Below are positions 51,029-59,337 of a stretch of DNA of 64,000 nt, piece after piece. Positions within the stretch are counted from its first letter, which is position 1. Every line of letters starts with the position of its first letter. The notes below the pieces were generated by a model that was not told the origin of the DNA, made no database searches, and worked only from the letters and a program-made list of their open reading frames with translations. The translations under genes and the position numbers were made by a program. The stretch is taken from positions 62,001-126,000 of the IMG/VR virus record IMGVR_UViG_3300036944_001289. One strand, given 5' to 3'.

Positions 51029-53608
51029 TCAACTGAATAAATCAAATAAATTAGTTTGAACAATAGAACCTGGCCGTTGTAATTCCCATCTGACATTTTC
51101 ATATAGTCTTTCTACAGCTGCGAGTACAGTCTTTTCAAAGATTAATTCGTAGTCTGGCTGAAAGATCTGTTTAAATTCTTCAGGGTAGTAGTATTTATAA
51201 GCAATTTTTTCGATATTATATTTGTTAGGTGTCTGTAGTTGTAATAATCTAACTTTATCACCGGATGATATCTTTTCGTATTTGTTAGTTAACTGTAGCT
51301 TTTCAATAAGTCTATTATAAAATATTGCTGCTTTAATATGATGCGGTGTACCTTTGGCTATTTCGAAACCATTACTGAGTTGTTCTCTTGCTTCATAATT
51401 ATTTAGATTACTAACCGTTGCAATAGATTCGATCGGTAGTGTCTTAAATATCTCCCACACGTTATTAATTGATATATTCGTTTTAGAATAATCCTGAGTA
51501 GAGAGCATCGTTTCAATTATATCTTTAATATAAGGTTTAACAGCAGATGGTATTGTACTACGTACAACATCTACACCTACGTATTTGTATTTATTACAAG
51601 GTATTTCTTCAATATCTAAGACATGTATTATATATCTTTTCTTCTGTAAGAAGATACCGGTATCAGCTATTGCTTCTCTTTTAAATACAAACCTACTATC
51701 TTCTGAGAATAATTCACGTTCACCCCATACTTTTATTTCGTTATTGAGCATATCACCTAGCTCTTTTACTTTATCGTAAAACTCTTTACTAATCTTGCCA
51801 GGTTTGTTAGAAAATATTACACCGTTTTGTACAATATTATCTAAAGTAAGATAAATAGAATCTGTATCGCCATATACTACGATATCATTATTATCTTGCT
51901 CTGTTATATTTGGTACATTCTCTTTTACGAACTTTTTAGCAACCTCTCCTGCAAATTTAATTACTTCTTGACCGGTTAAGGTTACAGATGAGGCTATATC
52001 GTCGTCACCTAATGGATTGTTTTTGTTACCAAATGCACCATAAGTTGCATTAATATATATCTTTTGAGCCAATTGCTTAGAGTCTAATTGAACACTCTCG
52101 TTCTTTAGATTATTATACTCTTCGCATTCTGTTTGATTTAGTTCTTCTAATTCTTTAATACGAAGTTTTACTTTCTTAAGTTTAGCTTGCGTCTTTTTAC
52201 GCTCCTTGTAGTAATAATCTAATACCTCAGGAAATATACCACGCTTTTTCTGTGTGAATATAATATTTGCCTTACTTATAGTAAGTCTCTCCTTTTGTAT
52301 AAAAAGAGCAAACTTGTCTTCAGTAAGTGTAAATGTTTGACCTGTAACGTGTCGTATTACCACATTACCATCTTCTCGTTTAATTATTTTACCTATCTTT
52401 GTCTCTGGTGATGTATTTAGAGTAATCATCACATTAGGATATAGAGAGTTAGCGTCAAATGATACTATATGCTTTTTAAATCCAGGTAATGGTTCACGAA
52501 CAAACGCACCGGGGTTAACGCCACTCTCTACATTGCGTATAAATGTAGGCAGTATTTGATTCTTATGTTTAGCGCGTATTGCTGCTGCTCCATTTATAAC
52601 TGATATAGAACCCATTGCTGCTTCAAATGTAGTTAGTCCTATATATGCAAACATTCTCACTAGGTTTAAATATCTTAGTTTGAACTCAAGGTTCTTAAGT
52701 AGTCTTACGTCTTGAATATTGTACTCTACAAACTTCTGCCAATTTTCATTGTATAGATCTATTAGATTACCTGTACCAATATCTACCTTTGATTCACCTA
52801 GTTCTAATTTAGCAATACTGTTTAGCTTGTAACTCTCTTTTTCACCTGGTGAGAACCTCTTATATATGTCAAGATAATCTATAAGAGATACACCTTCTAT
52901 AAACCAGCGCTGCAAGTCTTGACCTTTATCGTTGTGTATTTCACGGAAGTACGTTTTACCTGCTGGTGATAAACTATTACGTGTATTATCACCAAAAAGG
53001 TTTTGTACCCTATTCATGATATATGGAATATCGAATCCCATACTATTCCATCCACTTACAATATCGGGTGGATCAGATTTAAACCAATCTATAAACTTAG
53101 TAAGTAATTCTACTTCATTTTTACAATATATAAAGTCTACATCACTATCGACTACATTAAAAGGTTTTTCGCCCCAGCATATAAATCTCTTTGTAGTTGA
53201 ATCATATATAGTAATGACATTGATAGGGTATTTCGAATATCTTGCGTCAGGAAACTCTTCTGCAATAACTTCAATGTCAATAAATACTACTCTTACATCA
53301 TTTTTACTAAAGTCGGGTGTTTCGTTATCTTTATAGAATCGCTCTATAAGAAACTGTTGAACACATGGAAAATTATCGAATACTCTTGTTATACCTGTAT
53401 TGGTGATAAAAGAGCTTCTGTCAAATTGAGTATTAAATATACGTTTAACTAGCTTAGTACCGAATATTGAATCATATTCACCAGGACCTTCTATATAGAG
53501 GTGGGGTTTATAGGTAAAATCTTGTACATTTCTTTTACCATTTTCATCCCACCCTAATATAGTTATCTTCTGTTCTTTGCTGTTATAAAAAGCGTTCCTA
53601 TAACTCAT
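51029..53608 (-). CDS. gp43: Family B DNA polymerase
   Basis: IDIE, GWNSMGFD, YNIQDV, SFDANSLYP, KIYINATYG, YGDTDS, KKRY. Confidence 0.97.
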   Translation of the reverse strand: MSYRNAFYNSKEQKITILGWDENGKRNVQDFTYKPHLYIEGPGEYDSIFGTKLVKRIFNTQFDRSSFITNTGITRVFDNFPCVQQFLIERFYKDNETPDFSKNDVRVVFIDIEVIAEEFPDARYSKYPINVITIYDSTTKRFICWGEKPFNVVDSDVDFIYCKNEVELLTKFIDWFKSDPPDIVSGWNSMGFDIPYIMNRVQNLFGDNTRNSLSPAGKTYFREIHNDKGQDLQRWFIEGVSLIDYLDIYKRFSPGEKESYKLNSIAKLELGESKVDIGTGNLIDLYNENWQKFVEYNIQDVRLLKNLEFKLRYLNLVRMFAYIGLTTFEAAMGSISVINGAAAIRAKHKNQILPTFIRNVESGVNPGAFVREPLPGFKKHIVSFDANSLYPNVMITLNTSPETKIGKIIKREDGNVVIRHVTGQTFTLTEDKFALFIQKERLTISKANIIFTQKKRGIFPEVLDYYYKERKKTQAKLKKVKLRIKELEELNQTECEEYNNLKNESVQLDSKQLAQKIYINATYGAFGNKNNPLGDDDIASSVTLTGQEVIKFAGEVAKKFVKENVPNITEQDNNDIVVYGDTDSIYLTLDNIVQNGVIFSNKPGKISKEFYDKVKELGDMLNNEIKVWGERELFSEDSRFVFKREAIADTGIFLQKKRYIIHVLDIEEIPCNKYKYVGVDVVRSTIPSAVKPYIKDIIETMLSTQDYSKTNISINNVWEIFKTLPIESIATVSNLNNYEAREQLSNGFEIAKGTPHHIKAAIFYNRLIEKLQLTNKYEKISSGDKVRLLQLQTPNKYNIEKIAYKYYYPEEFKQIFQPDYELIFEKTVLAAVERLYENVRWELQRPGSIVQTNLFDLFS

Positions 53609-53623
53609 GCAGAAATATTATAA

Positions 53624-55090
53624 TTATTCCCGATTGTATTTTGTTATATTTTTTCTTGCACTGCTACCATAAGGTGTGCTGTATAGCTCTAAGTAACAAT
53701 CTATATTGGTATCCGTTTCAAGCCAGCGTGTTTCTGCATACTGTCTTGCACGTTTTGATATTGCCTTATATTGTTTGTGGTCTTTAAGAGTTTCGTTGAT
53801 TCTGTCTATCATTTCATCACCAGTCTTGAACTTAATAGGAGCATTTGAGTATGTTACTATATCTTGACATGCAATAGGTAGACCAAAAGCACACGCTTCA
53901 ATATACTTGAGATCGCTCTTAGCTTTATTAAAGTTGTTATCTTGTAGTGGTGCTATCATCATATTTGCTTTAATATTAGCAATATCTTGACCATAGTTAT
54001 ATAACTTAGACCATGGATGAAATTCGATCTTACCAGATTTTACGAGATCCATTAACGGTAATGGAAATGCACCTAAGAATATCCACTGAAACTTATCAAC
54101 AGTCTTACGAATTACATTATTCACATGGAAAAAGTCATCGTTATAATTTCCTGTTCTGTTTTCTACATCGAAATGTGCACCTGAACCTGTATAGAGAATA
54201 CGTGGCTTCTTCTTATTATTATCATAACTTGTCATTATTTCAGTACCATCGTAATAATTACCTAACCAGAACTTAGGCATGAAGTTTGGAATTACTGTAA
54301 CATTCTTATTACCTGTCTTACTCTTGTAGTAATCTTTCATGAAATCACAAGTAACTGTAATTTCATCACACAGAGCCATAATTGCACATGCTGATTCTCT
54401 TATCTCTGGATTATCAAAAGCTGGCTTAAACTTGTTATAGTCTGGTATGTCCTCTTTGAAACAGATATCATCTATTTCATAAATTATTTTCATCCCGTTT
54501 TGTTTTGAAACATCACGTAAGAATCTTACAAATTCAAGCTGTTGTCTTGTTGCTTGTCTTTGAATTCTTACGGACTTTACCATAGTATAATATCTTGGAT
54601 CTAGATTCATTACTGTTGTACCATGCACAACAGCCTTTTGATGAGCGTTGAGTACTTGCTCAGGCCAGATCATTCTCCAGTGACCACCATTTATATTCAG
54701 TTTAAATCGTTAATTAAAACCCGCTTATTAAAGCTGCTATATATTTCTATATAGATTAGACTATATCATCACCTCGTAAGGTGCTCCCCATTTCCACATC
54801 ACTTGATGTGTACTCACTTTTGTGATAGTCGTTGAACGTTCCGTTATGGCTTCGCTGCTGATTACCAGTTAAGGTTTCCAGCAATTAAAGGAGTTTGCAT
54901 TATATATTACTATATAATGGGCCAAGGTTTAGCCTGAGTAGTCTGCGTAGTAGTTTAAAAATCTTGGCAAAGATAGTTCTGGTGGAAGCATTTCTTCACT
55001 CTGTCGTTGAGGCTGTACTGTTTGTTGTATTTGCTGTGTAGGGTCACTAAACGGTAGTCTAGGTCTATTTATTGAATTAGGTACGAACAT
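53624..55090 (-). CDS. GT-B glycosyltransferase, spliced: exon 1 55090-54931, exon 2 54687-53624 (407 aa)
   Basis: Joining the exons gives YYADYSGC-GHWRMIWP in frame (1224 nt); IYEIDD, VIPNF, APLQDNNFNKAKSDLKYIE. Confidence 0.88.
54688..54930 (-). ncRNA. Group I self-splicing intron (243 nt, IA-like, no ORF)
   Basis: Exon ends in U within a GGCU/GGCC P1 (U-G pair); intron ends in G; P AAUUGCUGGAAA, Q AAUCAGCAGCGAAG, R UUCAACGACUA, S GAUAUAGUCU; P7.1 and P7.2 hairpins, P8, P9. Confidence 0.92.
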
Positions 55091-55112
55091 AATTTATATA
55101 CAGTATATTATT

Positions 55113-55982
55113 TTAAAATATTAAGAAATCAAATTTATAACCGTTTTCTTCTACACATTTCTTTTTTGCTAAATTTCTTTCCAAATCAATTTTAAATGTG
55201 TATTCACTTTTAACTTCAATTATTCTTTTTTCTTTAATTATAAAAATATCTGGATAATATCTATGCTCTTTACCATTATATGTATACGTAAAGGGAGGCA
55301 TGTTACATTTACCTGTTTCGATATCATCTTCTGTATAACCTTTAGCTAATAATAAATTAATTGCTTTATTTTCATAGCCTTGTGTTTTAAATTCCTTCTC
55401 TCCTACTATAAATGTTTTTATAGAAAAAGCGCTATTTTGTTGTTTTTCAAAATACTCTGCAACTTGCATAGGGTTAATAACTCCATACTCTTCTTTAAAT
55501 TTTTCTTGATATCTCTTTATTAATTCACCCCAACCATTATATTTTAATATAATGGTCTGTTTAAACAATTCGTTAGTAACATTTTTATAATTATATTGTT
55601 CTTTTCTGTTTCTTTTTTTAATACCATTTTCATTTAAAACTCTAATAATAACACAATTATCTACGCTGTATTTTTTGGATACATAATTGACACCCTTACC
55701 GTTGGAATACTCCTGAATAATATCTTTTATCTCATCTTCTGTAAATTTTTTGTAAATTGTATTGTTTCTTTTTTCATTATATCTTAATATGTTTCTGGAT
55801 TCTTTTTTATTACGTAACGAAACACCGTTTTTAATTATTATTTCTCTAATTACAGATACATTAACGGCATATAGGTTAGCAAGTTCTGACGCTGAGTAAC
55901 CTTCAATATAATTTATTATAATTTCTTTAGCTTTACCTTTTGTATTTTGATGCCTACTTTCATAAACAATATCTATGTTCAT
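55113..55982 (-). CDS. Free-standing PD-(D/E)XK endonuclease with HTH repeats (paralogue of 32565-33587)
   Basis: YGVINPMQ, QGYE, YYPDIF...IIEVKS; TAAATA-N5-ATG. Confidence 0.78.
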   Translation of the reverse strand: MNIDIVYESRHQNTKGKAKEIIINYIEGYSASELANLYAVNVSVIREIIIKNGVSLRNKKESRNILRYNEKRNNTIYKKFTEDEIKDIIQEYSNGKGVNYVSKKYSVDNCVIIRVLNENGIKKRNRKEQYNYKNVTNELFKQTIILKYNGWGELIKRYQEKFKEEYGVINPMQVAEYFEKQQNSAFSIKTFIVGEKEFKTQGYENKAINLLLAKGYTEDDIETGKCNMPPFTYTYNGKEHRYYPDIFIIKEKRIIEVKSEYTFKIDLERNLAKKKCVEENGYKFDFLIF

Positions 55983-56017
55983 ATATATATTTATTGTTTT
56001 GGTTATTGTATTCTTAA

Positions 56018-58042
56018 TTAATCAACAAAGTTTACACGTTTTGTTATTCCGTTATGCTTTTCAAGAAAGATTATATCTCCGTTTACAGCTTTTACACTCT
56101 CTTTTCTATGCGAGATAATTAAAATAGATTCTTTAAACGTTTCTACTCTTTCTTTTAGAATATCTACTACTAGCTCTACACCACGTTGGTCTAAGCTGGT
56201 ATCAAATAGTTCATCATATACAGTTACATTATAGTATACATCTCCGTGAGTCTTTCTCATATCAATAAATGAGAAAAGACATGCTAAATCAATAGCTTTT
56301 CTTTCTGCACCAGAGAAGTTATTATAAAGGCATATCTTACCTTTTTCGTTTAATATCTCTTCTTCAAAATACTCGTTAAATATGCATATACTATTACTAT
56401 CTAGCTTCTTGAGGTAGAATGCTAATTTTGCGTTAAAGTTTTGTAGAATTTTCTTTACTAGGAAACTCTTTACACCTTCTTCACTTATTACAAACTTTAC
56501 AACCTCAAGCATATCAGCTTTCTTTTTAAGACTTTGAATTGTATTATTGGATGTTTCTATCTTTGTATTTGCCTCTTTTATTAATTCATCAAAAGTCGTG
56601 ACATCGTTTGATATAGTTATGCTACCTTCTTGTAACTGTTTATTTAAATTCTGTAAATCTGTAATTCTTTTCTTATTTGACTGTCTTGTAGTTTCTTGCA
56701 CTGCTGCAAGCTTTATATCTTTATTAAGACTATCTATGTGTTTCTTTATTTTGGACTTTTTATCTTCTAAACCATTTGCCTCTTTTACATATGCAGATAA
56801 TGTCTCTACTAATTTTAGCACATCGTTATGCATATTTTTCTTTTCTTTTTCTATCTCCTCTATATCGTGTTCTGATATTGGACGTAAGCATGTAGGGCAA
56901 ATCTGTTCAGTAGTACCTACTTTTTGTAATTGCTCTTTTTTGGTTTTGATTTCGTTTTTTACTGTTGCTACATTTCCAAGTGTCTGATTGCATAGTTCTT
57001 CTACCTTAACCAAAGCCTTAGTATATTTTTCTAATTCTGTATTCTTTTCAGTCTGATTTATTATAACTTCATTTTGAATATCAGTTTCAATCTTTTGTAT
57101 CTCTGCCTCGTTATCTTTGATTTTTTTATTAATCGCTAATATCTTGGTCTCTTTTTCTTTAGACTTTAACTCCTTTTGCTTTTCAAAGGCAGATACACTG
57201 TTTTTAATTTCACTAAGTCTGGCATTTTCTATGTCTAGTTCTCTCTTTGTGCTGTTTTGGTCTTCTCTAAGAGAAGACATCATTGCAGAGAAAACCTGCA
57301 AATTGAATATTTGTTCAATAAACTTTCTTTTCTCTACTTTAGACTTTGACATGAAAGGTAGAGTATCATTTAATGTCATCAGTACACAATTTCTAAATAC
57401 TTCAGGTGATGATGATAGTACAGTTTCAATATACGAATTTGTATTTGCAATAGTATCTAATGTTATATCATTACCATCTTTATAAAGAAACAATCTAGAC
57501 GGTGATAATGTTCTTATTATGTTGTATGTGTTTGTATTACCGTTTTGATTAACATCGAATTCTAATTGCACTTCGCATGTATTTTGAGTTATATTGTTTG
57601 ATATAAACTCTTTCTTAAGTTCTCTTAATGTAGTACCAAATATAGCAAAGTATAATGCATCTGCTATAGTGGAATTGTGTGATGTAATACCGTTACTATA
57701 ATATTCCTTAACGTTTCTAACTTGCAAATCATATAAATTTTTAAATAAATTAGTACCTCTTACGTATTTTATAGTTTCACAACCGTCCTTTGTATGAACA
57801 ATTTCATTTACATTTAAATGTTGAACCTTTACAAACTCTACACCTGTAAATACTCTATGGTTACCTGAACATTTAAGGTTTTTTCCGGCATCAGTTTCAA
57901 TTTCATAAACTTGTTCATTGTATGCTGTTACATCTGCTTCATCGATAGGGTTAAACCCAAATCTTGTCTCTACATCAATATGACCTTTATATTGAGGATA
58001 TACTTTATAAAAATCAGCTATTTGTTTTACAGTAGCTTTCAT
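56018..58042 (-). CDS. gp46: gp46 (Rad50/SbcC) C-terminal precursor: 123-aa IntC plus C-extein
   Basis: Intein block B CSGNH, block F LYDLQV, block G YYSNGITSHN|S; then STIADAL, CPTC zinc hook, FSGAE signature, YDE, IISH. Confidence 0.92.
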   Translation of the reverse strand: MKATVKQIADFYKVYPQYKGHIDVETRFGFNPIDEADVTAYNEQVYEIETDAGKNLKCSGNHRVFTGVEFVKVQHLNVNEIVHTKDGCETIKYVRGTNLFKNLYDLQVRNVKEYYSNGITSHNSTIADALYFAIFGTTLRELKKEFISNNITQNTCEVQLEFDVNQNGNTNTYNIIRTLSPSRLFLYKDGNDITLDTIANTNSYIETVLSSSPEVFRNCVLMTLNDTLPFMSKSKVEKRKFIEQIFNLQVFSAMMSSLREDQNSTKRELDIENARLSEIKNSVSAFEKQKELKSKEKETKILAINKKIKDNEAEIQKIETDIQNEVIINQTEKNTELEKYTKALVKVEELCNQTLGNVATVKNEIKTKKEQLQKVGTTEQICPTCLRPISEHDIEEIEKEKKNMHNDVLKLVETLSAYVKEANGLEDKKSKIKKHIDSLNKDIKLAAVQETTRQSNKKRITDLQNLNKQLQEGSITISNDVTTFDELIKEANTKIETSNNTIQSLKKKADMLEVVKFVISEEGVKSFLVKKILQNFNAKLAFYLKKLDSNSICIFNEYFEEEILNEKGKICLYNNFSGAERKAIDLACLFSFIDMRKTHGDVYYNVTVYDELFDTSLDQRGVELVVDILKERVETFKESILIISHRKESVKAVNGDIIFLEKHNGITKRVNFVD
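57674..58042 (-). mobile_element. Split intein C-fragment (IntC, 123 aa)
   Basis: Ends in HN followed by Ser+1; contains block B, so the split site is atypical. Confidence 0.9.
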
Positions 58043-59095
58043 TAATTTCTTTTTTTATACTTTCTATTTGACTGTTATATGGTTTGTGTGACCAAAATTT
58101 AATAATATTATATCCATTGTCTTTAGCAATTAAATGTTTCTTTTTTTCATGTTCTATTTTTGATGTTATGGAGATGTTTTTATATGGGTATTTAAAATTT
58201 TTAATTTCATCATGTGACATAATTTCAGGATCTGGGTGAAATTCATATCTGTTGTATTCGATAATAATCTTAAGAGAAGATATTGTAAAATCAAAGTAAA
58301 ATATTTTTTTATTATCTCTTAATGAGAACTCCTTAGACCCTGTAATTCCTATCATGATATCATTACGTTGTATACCTAATTTCCTACAAAACTTATATAA
58401 AGGTATTAAAATCTTTAAACTTTCTTTAGAGGCTTTGCCGCGTTTCTTATATGTAATATATTTAAAATTATAATAGTGTGTGTTAAAATTTTCTGTTGTT
58501 TGTTCTATTTTGTTTTCTAAAATATACTTTTTTGTTTTGTGTATGATGTATTGATCTGAACCTTTTTGTACCCTAAATTTACAATAATCATCTAAATTAC
58601 AATTTCGTAATATAAACGACTCTAAACTATGTTGTTTAAGTTTGTTTATTAACTCAATTTCTTTACTACTTTTACAAAGTAATGTAATTTGCCACTTTTT
58701 CTGTCGGTTATTAAAAACTTTTAAACCTTCTAATTCTCCATACTTTTCAATACATTTTTTAAGTGAAAACGTAGACTGCCTTTCCTTAACCTTATTAATT
58801 GCATCTTGCGTTGTTAATCCTTTTTAACCCAATAACCAACTTGATTATTTCTCCAATCCTTTCGTCCTGTATTTTTGCTTTTACTTTTTTGCGATAATAT
58901 TTGTTGATGCTCTAATACTTTTTTAATAGCCTCATCTTCTGTATACCCTTTTTTAATCCAAAAGTACTTTGAGGATTTTCTAAATGAGCTTACATGCCTT
59001 TTTGCTTCTTCTTCTGTAAAAACTATTCCAGTATCAGGGTTGATTCTTTTTCTAGTTACCCAAAATTGCCATTGTTGTGGTGAATTGTAACTCAT
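58014..59095 (-). pseudogene. Vsr/DUF559-like homing endonuclease with a -1 frameshift at ~58820 (about 360 aa if restored)
   Basis: YWVKK|D* becomes YWVKKGLTTQDAINKV in the -1 frame, open to 58014; FYFDF...IIIEYN.YEFH...K...A..NGY.II.FW; own TAAATA-N5-ATG. Confidence 0.8.
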
Positions 59096-59103
59096 ATAAT
59101 TAT

Positions 59104-59337
59104 TTATTGATTCTCAATAAATTTTTTAAACTTTTCCAAAACCATTGCATCCTTTATTTGAATAGTTACTTCAGTCTGCGGATCAACACACTTACCTACA
59201 CCGTTTCTTCTGTCTTCCTTATCTCTATTAATACCGGTGATAATATTTAAACCTGTATTAAAGTCTAAACTAACCACATCATCACCTACTGATAGGAAGT
59301 TTTTTATCTTTATGTTTTTAAAGTTTACGTACTTCAT
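59104..59337 (-). CDS. gp46: gp46 N-terminal precursor: 49-aa N-extein plus 28-aa IntN
   Basis: IKNFLSVG...NIITGIN...NGVGK|CVDPQTEVTIQI...; ATGA-coupled to gp47. Confidence 0.92.
   Translation of the reverse strand: MKYVNFKNIKIKNFLSVGDDVVSLDFNTGLNIITGINRDKEDRRNGVGKCVDPQTEVTIQIKDAMVLEKFKKFIENQ
59107..59190 (-). mobile_element. Split intein N-fragment (IntN, 28 aa)
   Basis: Block A CVDPQTEV directly after the Walker A Lys. Confidence 0.88.

What the first reader, a model, noticed from the sequence alone, without database searches (positions are those of the whole stretch)
53624..55090. ORF-less group I intron inside a phage glycosyltransferase gene
Seen: 243 nt (54688-54930) with group I P/Q/R/S elements, a U-G pair at the 5' splice site, terminal G and P7.1/P7.2 hairpins. 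Removing it joins a 53-codon exon missed by the ORF track and restores ADYSG-C-GHWRMIWP, with the Cys codon split T|GT. Known: phage group I introns mostly occupy highly conserved genes such as td, nrd, DNA polymerase and terminase. Inference: a glycosyltransferase host is unusual and suggests this gene, directly upstream of gp43, is conserved and important in this lineage. It is also a compact ribozyme candidate.
Basis: partly seen in the sequence, partly recalled or inferred. Interest (0 to 1): 0.75.

Follow-up and report, generated by a model that had tools for sequence, protein, structure and literature searches.

The report
Phage intron with partner nuclease gene
A 243-base self-splicing group I intron does interrupt a conserved glycosyltransferase gene of an uncultured T4-like phage, and in every lineage that has it a nuclease gene sits next door that probably spreads it: a familiar kind of selfish DNA in a new host gene.

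Summary
Window 54930..54688 (minus strand, 243 nt) matches the Rfam group I intron model over its full length (96.6 bits, E 1e-25). It has a U.G pair at the 5' splice site, a terminal G, and P7.1/P7.2 hairpins (subgroup IA2 type).

The host protein has a GT-B (GT4-like) glycosyltransferase fold. It sits between gp46 and gp43 in 74 of 74 intron-less relatives examined.

It encodes two helix-turn-helix modules plus a TnsA-like PD-(D/E)xK nuclease domain. It is present in all five intron-bearing lineages found and in none of the intron-less ones, including their closest sisters.

The best reading is an ORF-less intron partnered with a free-standing homing endonuclease ("collaborative homing", as at cyanophage S-PM2 psbA). 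Splicing and cleavage were not tested, because no RNA run was listed. This is a new member of a known kind, with a possibly new homing-endonuclease family. Next door, gp46 is broken by a split intein.

The parts
54931..55090 (-). Exon 1 of the glycosyltransferase gene. It holds 53 codons plus the first base (T) of the Cys codon, and encodes strand beta1 and the start of the YSGCG loop.
   Evidence: ORF. It aligns with the N-termini of intron-less homologues.
54688..54930 (-). ORF-less group I intron, 243 nt, IA2-like. Elements in window coordinates: internal guide sequence 54925..54920; P2 54918..54899; P3 54893..54888 with 54789..54784; P4-P5 54884..54855; P6/P6a 54855..54836; P7 54830..54825 with 54764..54759; P7.1 54825..54814; P7.2 54810..54795; P8 54783..54770; P9 54754..54737; P9.1 54734..54723; P9.2 54721..54699; terminal G 54688.
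   Evidence: Rfam 96.6 bits. Helices mapped. Of 50 predicted pairs, 26 show compensatory changes across 7 phage introns. Compensatory changes also occur in orthologous introns at the same site. The gap against the intron-less allele is exactly 243 nt.
53624..54687 (-). Exon 2 of the glycosyltransferase gene. It begins with GT of the Cys codon, then GHWRMIWP... The annotated 349-aa ORF starting at MIWP is a truncation artefact.
   Evidence: GT-B fold shown.
55113..55982 (-). Free-standing 289-aa DUF7487 gene. It encodes two N-terminal helix-turn-helix modules and a C-terminal PD-(D/E)xK nuclease domain (E204, D245, E256, K258). It is the candidate homing endonuclease, and it ends 182 nt upstream of the intron insertion site.
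   Evidence: Pfam PF24308, E 1.5e-26, plus a weak TnsA-like N match. Invariant D/E/K residues. AF2 model with pLDDT 80. TnsA nuclease domain at Z 9.1, Vsr at 6.3, I-Bth0305I at 6.0. Present only in intron-bearing genomes.
56018..58042 (-). Context: the gp46-like (Rad50/SbcC-type) gene, C-terminal fragment. Homology with relatives that lack both the intron and the nuclease gene stops at its end (56014) and resumes in exon 1.
51029..53608 (-). Context: the gp43 family B DNA polymerase gene, directly downstream of the glycosyltransferase gene.

Best explanation
The glycosyltransferase gene of this uncultured T4-like phage is interrupted, inside the Cys codon of its conserved YSGCGHW loop, by a 243-nt ORF-less group I intron of the phage IA2 type.

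Splicing (inferred from the anatomy). The transcript should fold into the P1-P9.2 ribozyme. Exogenous guanosine bound at P7 attacks after the U of the U.G pair in P1. The terminal G 54688 then takes the same pocket, and the exons are joined to give a 407-aa GT-B enzyme. The TAA formed at the 5' splice site stops ribosomes from running into the ribozyme.

Mobility (inferred). The adjacent free-standing DUF7487 gene encodes a site-specific PD-(D/E)xK endonuclease. It cuts intron-less alleles at or near the insertion site during mixed infection. Repair from the intron-bearing genome copies the block nuclease gene, exon 1 and intron into the recipient. The intron splits the target site and so protects its own genome. 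This is collaborative (trans) homing.

What is shown: the intron, its exact limits, its conserved structure, the restored reading frame, the nuclease fold and motif, and the perfect co-occurrence.
What is inferred: self-splicing activity, nuclease activity and the nuclease's target.

My confidence that this is a genuine, functional group I intron in this gene is about 0.95. My confidence that DUF7487 is its homing endonuclease is about 0.55.
For: Intron:
- Full-length Rfam hit at 96.6 bits.
- Exact 243-column gap against the intron-less allele.
- Homologues read through the predicted junction.
- 26 of 50 helix pairs covary among related phage introns.
- The orthologous intron in L105, 74% identical, keeps P3, P6, P6a, P7.1, P8 and P9 through double changes.
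- Exon 2 is under purifying selection: identity by codon position is 91, 94 and 58%.

Nuclease:
- DUF7487 has invariant D245, E256 and K258.
- Its C-terminal domain matches the TnsA catalytic domain at Z 9.1 over 115 residues, and also Vsr and the homing endonuclease I-Bth0305I.
- It has N-terminal HTH modules.
- Only the C-terminal domain is conserved across the family; the N-termini vary.
- Homologues are free-standing genes beside DNA ligase or QueC/QueE genes.

Linkage:
- All five intron-bearing lineages carry the gene. They are the window, P0005/L002, P0010, P0008/L106 and P0085/L105.
- None of 74 intron-less IMG/VR loci carries it, nor do the nearest intron-less sisters P0002/3, P0004 and P0007.
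- On the GT tree the five lineages need five changes, at least four of them forced by well-supported branches.
- The intron is 97% identical between the window and L002, while four-fold sites of exon 2 are only 60% identical.
- Exon 1 groups the window with the intron-bearing P0005 (83%) rather than with P0002 (66%), although P0002 is its nearest relative in exon 2.

Precedent: S-PM2 psbA with F-CphI, and a second phage case (PMC6083498, PMC3984707).
Against: - There is no RNA evidence: no RNA run was listed.
- No biochemical data exist for any DUF7487 protein, and no paper mentions the family.
- The nuclease gene and the intron are only 182 nt apart. Ordinary recombination would also keep them together, so co-occurrence alone does not prove a functional partnership.
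- In L002 the last 47 nt of the nuclease gene are 85% identical to the window, against 97% for the intron. The two did not obviously move together in the latest exchange.
- P0006 (intron-less) and P0008 (intron-bearing) share an exon-1 type, which does not fit one simple conversion tract.
- P10 pairing is weak, at 2-3 bp.
- The Foldseek E-values for the nuclease model were all above 0.001. The fold call rests on VIA-align Z scores and the sequence motif.
Confidence: 0.6

Rival explanations
1. The intron is genuine and DUF7487 is a free-standing homing endonuclease, but its target is not the intron insertion site. It could lie in the 3' end of gp46 or in exon 1, for example. The nuclease gene would then spread by intron-less homing, and the intron would hitch-hike by co-conversion or be inherited separately.
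For: The nuclease gene is inserted exactly between gp46 and the GT gene, the classic position of T4 seg/mob genes (PMC2988022, found). The intron and the nuclease 3' end differ in divergence between the window and L002, at 97% against 85%. DNA contigs in runs X3 and X4 lack 845 bp of the nuclease gene but keep its last 57 nt and exon 1. This shows that the two elements can be uncoupled.
Against: No genome with the nuclease gene but without the intron was seen among five plus 74 lineages. That is what is expected if the intron is needed to protect the target. Exon 1, which lies between the two elements, co-segregates with them in the window/P0005 pair, and the mosaic boundary falls near the insertion site.
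Confidence: 0.2
2. DUF7487 is not a homing endonuclease. It could be a regulator, a repair nuclease, or a defence or counter-defence gene. It would be a passenger that entered the locus together with the intron and stays with it only through tight physical linkage. The intron would then move, if at all, by general recombination.
For: No member of the family has been characterised. The fold matches have middling Z scores, and Foldseek E-values are above 0.001. The distance of 182 nt makes joint inheritance likely in any case.
Against: The protein has the modular build of phage homing endonucleases: variable HTH DNA-binding modules plus a conserved nuclease domain with an intact catalytic motif. 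The gene is sporadic and inserted between conserved DNA-metabolism genes, both here and in homologues. It is patchy on the host-gene tree, needing at least four changes.
Confidence: 0.15
3. The intron is a decayed, non-splicing remnant, and the glycosyltransferase gene is a pseudogene in this phage.
For: No transcript data are available, and P10 is weak.
Against: The covariance-model match is full-length and high-scoring, with all core helices and junctions intact. Orthologous introns keep the helices through compensatory changes. Both exons are intact and under purifying selection in four lineages with DNA, and a fifth is inferred from gene spacing. The gene is otherwise universally kept in this phage group.
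Confidence: 0.03

Closest known systems
Cyanophage S-PM2 psbA group I intron with the adjacent free-standing endonuclease F-CphI, and the second described phage pair; 'collaborative' or trans homing (Zeng, Bonocora & Shub 2009, as described in PMC6083498 and PMC3984707)
   Same: [quoted passage not shown] A free-standing nuclease gene sits immediately beside the interrupted gene. Both elements are optional among relatives.
   Different: The host gene is a GT-B glycosyltransferase, not psbA or nrdA. The nuclease has a TnsA-like PD-(D/E)xK fold in family DUF7487, not the Endo VII-like (F-CphI) or HNH type. Cleavage of the intron insertion site has not been shown here.
Phage subgroup IA2 group I introns (T4 td/nrdB/sunY; Staphylococcus Twort-like, Bacillus SPO1-like and many other phage introns; Rfam RF00028)
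   Same: The core P3-P9 and the junction sequences are the same (GUUCAACGACUA, GAUAUAGUCU). P7.1 and P7.2 are present, and P2, P8 and P9 carry tetraloops. Nucleotide identity is 70-79% over the core.
   Different: The host gene and insertion site are new. There is no internal ORF. A 49-nt P9.1/P9.2 extension follows the Rfam model's end.
PD-(D/E)xK-superfamily homing endonucleases: I-Ssp6803I, and the Vsr-like EDxHD family (I-Bth0305I; Dassa et al. 2009, PMC2677866)
   Same: The nuclease domain has a restriction-endonuclease-like fold. The EDxHD family also occurs free-standing in aquatic phage genomes and in group I introns. The structural match to I-Bth0305I is Z 6.0 and to Vsr Z 6.3.
   Different: DUF7487 keeps the canonical E...PD...ExK motif and is closest to the TnsA catalytic domain (Z 9.1). 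It has no sequence match to any solved structure, and its DNA-binding part is a pair of HTH modules.
TnsA, the Tn7 transposase subunit (PDB 1f1z)
   Same: It is the best structural match for residues 170-289, with 115 residues aligned at rmsd 3.0 A. There is also a weak match to Pfam Tn7_TnsA-like_N.
   Different: There is no TnsB/C partner, no transposon ends and no TnsA C-terminal domain. The gene context is a phage replication module.

Membership tests
Group I intron (Rfam RF00028) | Match to the covariance model above the curated gathering score | tested here: met
   96.6 bits against a cut-off of 50, E 1.1e-25, model positions 1-253. The whole-window 'gathering' run missed it.
Group I intron (Rfam RF00028) | P1 helix between the 5' exon and the internal guide sequence, with a U.G pair at the 5' splice site, and a terminal G at the 3' splice site | tested here: met
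   Exon GGCU plus intron AA pairs with UUGGCC, and U 54931 pairs with G. The terminal G is 54688. The limits are fixed independently by the intron-less allele.
Group I intron (Rfam RF00028) | Conserved core helices P3-P9 kept through compensatory substitutions | tested here: met
   26 of 50 pairs are compensatory among 7 phage introns. Orthologous introns at the same site show 16 double-change cells. P7 is invariant and therefore uninformative.
Group I intron (Rfam RF00028) | Guanosine-dependent self-splicing | not testable with these tools
   No RNA run was listed. An in vitro assay is needed.
Subgroup IA2-type phage intron | Extra hairpins P7.1 and P7.2 between P7 and P3' | tested here: met
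   The hairpins lie at intron 106-117 and 121-136. Both are predicted in the consensus fold, and P7.1 covaries.
Homing endonuclease, PD-(D/E)xK superfamily | Restriction-endonuclease-like fold with the acidic/lysine catalytic motif | tested here: met
   D245, E256 and K258 are invariant and E204 nearly so. TnsA Z 9.1, Vsr Z 6.3, I-Bth0305I Z 6.0.
Homing endonuclease, PD-(D/E)xK superfamily | Optional gene inserted between or within conserved genes, with a patchy distribution among close relatives | tested here: met
   It is a roughly 0.9 kb insertion between gp46 and the GT gene. It is absent from 74 of 74 intron-less loci and from the nearest sisters.
Homing endonuclease, PD-(D/E)xK superfamily | Site-specific cleavage of alleles that lack the element | not testable with these tools
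   This requires recombinant protein and intron-less target DNA.
Collaborative (trans) homing pair | ORF-less intron and a free-standing endonuclease gene adjacent to each other and co-distributed | tested here: met
   Five of five intron-bearing lineages carry the gene (the P0010 intron is inferred from gene spacing only), and no intron-less lineage does.
Collaborative (trans) homing pair | [quoted passage not shown] | not testable with these tools
   The only support is indirect: no genome carrying the nuclease gene without the intron was seen.
GT-B glycosyltransferase (GT4-like) | Two Rossmann-like domains of the GT-B fold | tested here: met
   The AF2 model of the intron-less homologue P0002 (pLDDT 74) matches BshA, MshA, HepE and PglA, with E 5.6e-10 and TM about 0.6. 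PHROG 7162 matches at E 8.7e-23. The Pfam match is below threshold.
GT-B glycosyltransferase (GT4-like) | Sugar-transfer activity and a known acceptor | not tested
   The acceptor is unknown. The genome has no thymidylate-synthase-like hydroxymethylase, so T4-style DNA glucosylation is not supported.

The most novel reading that the evidence does not exclude
DUF7487 is a previously unrecognised family of free-standing homing endonucleases, combining a TnsA-like PD-(D/E)xK nuclease with tandem HTH modules. [quoted passage not shown] This would be a third, independent natural case of collaborative homing. The pair has persisted and diverged together (intron down to 74%, nuclease down to 57% identity) instead of fusing into a single mobile intron.
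Probability: 0.5. Interest if true: 0.6.

Novelty: new member of a known kind. Interest (0 to 1): 0.45.

Why it matters
The result corrects the annotation of a core gene in an abundant, uncultured group of aquatic T4-like phages. The 349-aa ORF is a truncation; the real product has 407 aa.

It adds a glycosyltransferase to the list of phage genes invaded by group I introns.

It also gives a concrete, testable function to an uncharacterised Pfam family, DUF7487. Only two natural examples of an ORF-less intron cooperating with a free-standing endonuclease are described in the review I read (PMC3984707). A further case with a different nuclease fold, seen in five diverged lineages, would show that this arrangement can be stable and is more than a brief step toward a composite mobile intron.

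The locus also carries a split intein in gp46. Three kinds of selfish element therefore sit within 6 kb of a replication module.

Tried and rejected
- The whole-window Rfam scan at gathering thresholds found nothing. Only the narrow 'evalue' scan and the genome scan recovered the intron.
- Searches for RNA runs listed none, so no spliced junction could be checked. DNA runs gave contigs only.
- Sequence searches of the nuclease and of a GT profile against PDB found nothing meaningful. NCBIfam gave nothing for the GT protein.
- Foldseek on the whole nuclease model gave no hit below E 0.001. The domain-level VIA-align second look was needed.
- A pattern scan for the intron's P4-P5 stretch in viral and metagenome contigs found only the same phage and an unrelated LAGLIDADG-bearing intron.
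- A scan of viral contigs with the nuclease protein found only the same phage.
- The promoter and terminator scans were uninformative in this AT-rich DNA.
- I considered that DUF7487 might serve the neighbouring gp46 intein. I rejected this because the P0005 and P0010 lineages have the intron and DUF7487 but an uninterrupted 600-aa gp46.
- I considered a T4-like DNA glucosyltransferase role for the host gene. It is not supported, because no hydroxymethylase-type gene was found in the genome.
- The 42-aa ORF inside the intron (54884..54756) spans the catalytic core, so I rejected it as a gene.
- DNA for the P0010 lineage was not available, so its intron is inferred from gene spacing only.
Full report
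**1. The observation**

On the minus strand, the ORF list shows a 53-codon ORF (55090..54929) and a 349-codon ORF beginning MIWP (54673..53624), separated by non-coding sequence.

A whole-window Rfam scan at gathering thresholds returned nothing. A scan of 54500..55150 gave a full-length match to RF00028, Group I catalytic intron. It spans 54941..54737 on the minus strand, covers model positions 1-253, and scores 96.6 bits against a cut-off of 50, with E 1.1e-25. A scan of the whole 209,282-bp virus genome found the same match. It is the genome's only match at E 0.001 or better.

The alignment and my own helix mapping give the following elements, in intron coordinates:
- P1: exon GGCU plus intron AA pairs with intron UUGGCC, and the last exon base forms a U.G pair.
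- P2: 8 bp with a GUAA loop.
- P3, P4, a short P5, and P6/P6a.
- P7: GACUAU pairs with AUAGUC.
- P7.1 and P7.2: two hairpins inserted between P7 and P3'.
- P8: UACG loop.
- P9: GAAA loop.
- A 49-nt P9.1/P9.2 extension that ends in G 54688.

Reading, an in-frame stop lies at 54712-54710. Downstream of it, G 54688 is the only G that precedes an in-frame junction. The exon-1 frame ends in a TAA built from the exon's last T and the intron's first two A.

**2. Independent proof of the boundaries**

The exon-2 protein has 1744 homologues. Most are 398-414 aa long, about 53 residues longer than the ORF. They read ...LPRFLNYYADYSGCGHWRMIWPEQ... straight through the predicted junction.

An intron-less allele from a phage 87% identical in DNA (L004) aligns as GGCT|GTGGTCAC, with a gap of exactly 243 columns. 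BLAST homology with L003 and L004 resumes at window 54687, the first base of exon 2. Shifting the splice sites by one base would not reproduce the intron-less sequence. The spliced product has 407 aa.

**3. The ribozyme is conserved as a structure**

blastn against phage genomes hits only the intron. It finds 238-268 records, including Staphylococcus Twort-like, Bacillus, Acinetobacter, Vibrio and Pseudomonas 201phi2-1 phages. Identity is about 70-79% over the core. The hits lie in genes as varied as tape measure, cell-wall hydrolase, ribonucleotide reductase and RNA polymerase.

I aligned the window intron and its L002 copy with five of these introns. The consensus fold contains P2, P3, P4, P5, P6, P6a, P7.1, P7.2, P8 and P9. 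Of its 50 pairs, 26 are kept through changes on both sides. P1 with its U.G pair also covaries with each intron's own exon, as can be read.

Orthologous introns at the same GT site were found in four other lineages:
- L002: 97% identical to the window intron.
- L106: 89% identical over the part not masked by N.
- L105: 74% identical, Rfam 77.5 bits.
- P0010: inferred from gene spacing only.

L105 keeps P3, P6, P6a, P7.1, P8 and P9 through double substitutions. L002 has a U-A to C-G change in P9.1. Exon 2 is under purifying selection: identity by codon position between the window and L002 is 91, 94 and 58%. This argues strongly that the intron splices. No RNA run was listed, however, so splicing itself was not observed.

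**4. The host gene**

Pfam gives only a sub-threshold Glyco_trans_1_2 match. PHROG 7162, 'glycosyltransferase', matches at E 8.7e-23.

An AlphaFold model of the intron-less homologue P0002 (pLDDT 74) matches GT4-type GT-B enzymes: BshA, MshA, HepE and PglA. The best E-value is 5.6e-10, probability 1.00, TM about 0.6. The insertion site lies in the loop between strand beta1 and helix alpha1. That loop, YSGCGHW, is invariant across the family.

The gene lies between the gp46-like and gp43 genes in every one of 74 intron-less IMG/VR loci with enough flank. The polymerase is only about 30% identical to those of cultured T4-like cyanophages. This is therefore a deep, uncultured aquatic lineage. The acceptor is unknown, and no thymidylate-synthase-type hydroxymethylase is encoded in the genome.

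**5.

Homology between the window and intron-less relatives stops at 56014, the end of gp46, and resumes in exon 1. The 289-codon gene 55982..55113 is thus an insertion of about 0.9 kb.

Several results point to a nuclease:
- It belongs to Pfam DUF7487 (E 1.5e-26), with a weak TnsA-like N-terminal match.
- Relatives share only the C-terminal ~45% of the protein.
- Fifty family members have invariant D245, E256 and K258 and a nearly invariant E204. This is a PD...ExK nuclease motif.
- In the AlphaFold model (pLDDT 80), residues 170-289 superpose on the TnsA catalytic domain at Z 9.1, with 115 residues at 3.0 A. They also match Vsr (Z 6.3) and the homing endonuclease I-Bth0305I (Z 6.0).
- Residues 10-120 form two helix-turn-helix modules, like resolvase, paired-domain and Cbp1 DNA binders.

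Foldseek alone gave no hit below E 0.001, and there is no sequence relative in PDB. Other family members are free-standing genes beside DNA ligase or QueC/QueE genes in virus-like contigs. No paper mentions the family.

**6. Co-distribution**

Among 80 IMG/VR loci, only the one identical to the window has the intron, and only that one has the nuclease gene. All five intron-bearing lineages carry a DUF7487 gene directly upstream of exon 1. In L106 its product is 73% identical to the window's over the 172 residues held, and in L105 57% over 89 residues.

The closest intron-less sisters have gp47, gp46, GT and pol with nothing in between. These are P0002/3, P0004 and P0007.

On a GT tree the five intron-bearing rows need five changes. 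At least four are forced by well-supported branches, and each intron-bearing lineage within the main clade has an intron-less sister. This was a quick tree; a careful tree with three of the lineages gave three changes, at least two forced.

The window and L002 introns are 97% identical, although four-fold sites in exon 2 are only 60% identical. In exon 1 the window is closest to the intron-bearing P0005 (83%) and far from P0002 (66%), which is its nearest relative in exon 2 (85%). So there is a mosaic boundary near the insertion site. The block of nuclease gene, exon 1 and intron has a history different from that of exon 2.

**7. Mechanism**

The anatomy fits 'collaborative' or trans homing. 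In that process a free-standing endonuclease cuts intron-less alleles at the intron insertion site. The ORF-less intron protects the donor and is copied into the break. This is described for cyanophage S-PM2 psbA with F-CphI and for one other phage (PMC6083498 and PMC3984707).

No genome with the nuclease gene but without the intron was seen, which fits that model. Four points count against it or remain open:
- The two elements are 182 nt apart, so linkage alone would keep them together.
- In L002 the last 47 nt of the nuclease gene are 85% identical to the window, not 97%.
- P0006 and P0008 share an exon-1 type but differ in intron state.
- Neither the nuclease activity nor its target has been tested.

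I put the intron at about 0.95 and the nuclease partnership at about 0.55.

**8. DNA-level polymorphism**

Contigs of two related metagenome runs (X3, X4) contain a joint from 55169 to 56015. It removes 845 bp of the nuclease gene but keeps its last 57 nt, the spacer and exon 1. In X3 a contig with the full gene coexists with this form. This looks like loss of the endonuclease gene from intron-bearing genomes, the decay phase expected for homing elements.

In the source run the assembly breaks inside the intron core, and depth more than doubles at 54713..54813. Other introns with the same core are therefore present in that community.

**9. Comparison and novelty**

The intron is an ordinary member of the phage IA2-type group I introns, in a new host gene. 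The arrangement is a new example of a known kind of system. The possibly new element is the nuclease family.

A glycosyltransferase host is not in itself surprising, given the range of phage genes already known to carry such introns. At 243 nt the intron is not unusually compact.

**10. Neighbouring element**

The gp46-like gene is itself broken:
- ORF 59337..59104 encodes the gp46 N-terminus up to the P-loop, ...NGVGK, followed by 28 residues starting with C.
- ORF 58042..56018 starts with about 108 residues that match the Pfam intein splicing domain (E 3.6e-6, below the cut-off). These end in ...SHN, followed by STIADALYFAIFG...
- The uninterrupted homologue reads NGVGK-SSISESIYFAIFG.

About 1 kb with two short ORFs lies between the halves. 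This matches the 'fractured gene' arrangement of split intein plus free-standing endonuclease described from marine metagenomes (PMC2677866). The P0005 and P0010 lineages have an intact 600-aa gp46 but still carry the intron and DUF7487. The nuclease therefore tracks the intron and not the intein.

Noticed in passing
window 56018-59337 (minus strand): The gp46-like Rad50/SbcC-type gene is split in its P-loop (GK|S) by what looks like a split intein with an atypical split point. ORF 59337..59104 holds the N-extein plus a 28-residue N-intein piece starting with Cys. ORF 58042..56018 starts with a C-intein piece of about 108 residues ending in HN, followed by S. About 1 kb lies between the halves. 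This resembles the 'fractured genes' of Dassa et al. 2009. Relatives have an uninterrupted 599-600 aa gp46.
   Followed up: partly
window 58014-58355 and 58814-59095 (minus strand): Two short ORFs (113 aa and 93 aa) lie between the two intein halves. The 113-aa ORF matches the C-terminal end of PHROG 22677, a 353-position family of unknown function, at E 4.6e-12. It may be the remnant of a larger gene, perhaps a decayed endonuclease. It overlaps the start of the C-intein ORF by 29 nt.
   Followed up: partly
window 55170-56014: In metagenome runs X3 and X4, contigs join 55169 directly to 56015. This deletes 845 bp of the DUF7487 gene but keeps its last 57 nt and exon 1. In X3 a contig with the complete gene coexists with this form. 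The nuclease gene is therefore polymorphic in natural populations.
   Followed up: partly
window 54688-54930 versus L002:233-475: The intron is 97.1% identical between two lineages (7 differences). The flanking exons are 82-83% identical, four-fold sites about 60%, and the nuclease gene's 3' end 85%. Either the intron alone was exchanged recently with very short conversion tracts, or it is under unusually tight constraint. This is not resolved.
   Followed up: partly
window 54713-54813: In the source run X1, summed contig depth rises from about 240-265 to 594 over the intron core, and the assembly breaks at 54734-54771. Other elements in the same sample share this conserved P7-P8 region.
   Followed up: no
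whole window: The Rfam scan of the full 64 kb at gathering thresholds reported no match, although the intron scores 96.6 bits when a short stretch or the whole genome is searched. Filtered whole-window scans can miss such introns in AT-rich phage DNA.
   Followed up: yes
L089:1274-2148 (IMGVR_UViG_3300007635_000087): A different group I intron (Rfam 54 bits) in another viral contig shares an identical 24-nt P4-P5 stretch with the window intron. It is followed by a 238-aa LAGLIDADG-type ORF. Its gene context is unrelated: no GT, gp46 or DUF7487.
   Followed up: partly
L094-L099: DUF7487 homologues sit directly downstream of DNA ligase genes in two different virus-like contigs. One of these contigs (L096) also has a NUMOD3-bearing ORF on the other side of the ligase gene. 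Another homologue sits beside QueC/radical-SAM (7-deazaguanine pathway) genes. These positions are typical of free-standing homing endonuclease genes.
   Followed up: no
window 54756-54884 (minus strand): A 42-codon TTG-initiated ORF lies wholly inside the intron and spans its catalytic core (P4 to P8). I treat it as a mechanical ORF, not a gene.
   Followed up: no
whole genome G000: No thymidylate-synthase-like gene (PF00303) was found in the 209-kb genome. The conserved glycosyltransferase between gp46 and gp43 is therefore unlikely to act on hydroxymethylated bases as the T4 glucosyltransferases do. Its acceptor is unknown.
   Followed up: partly
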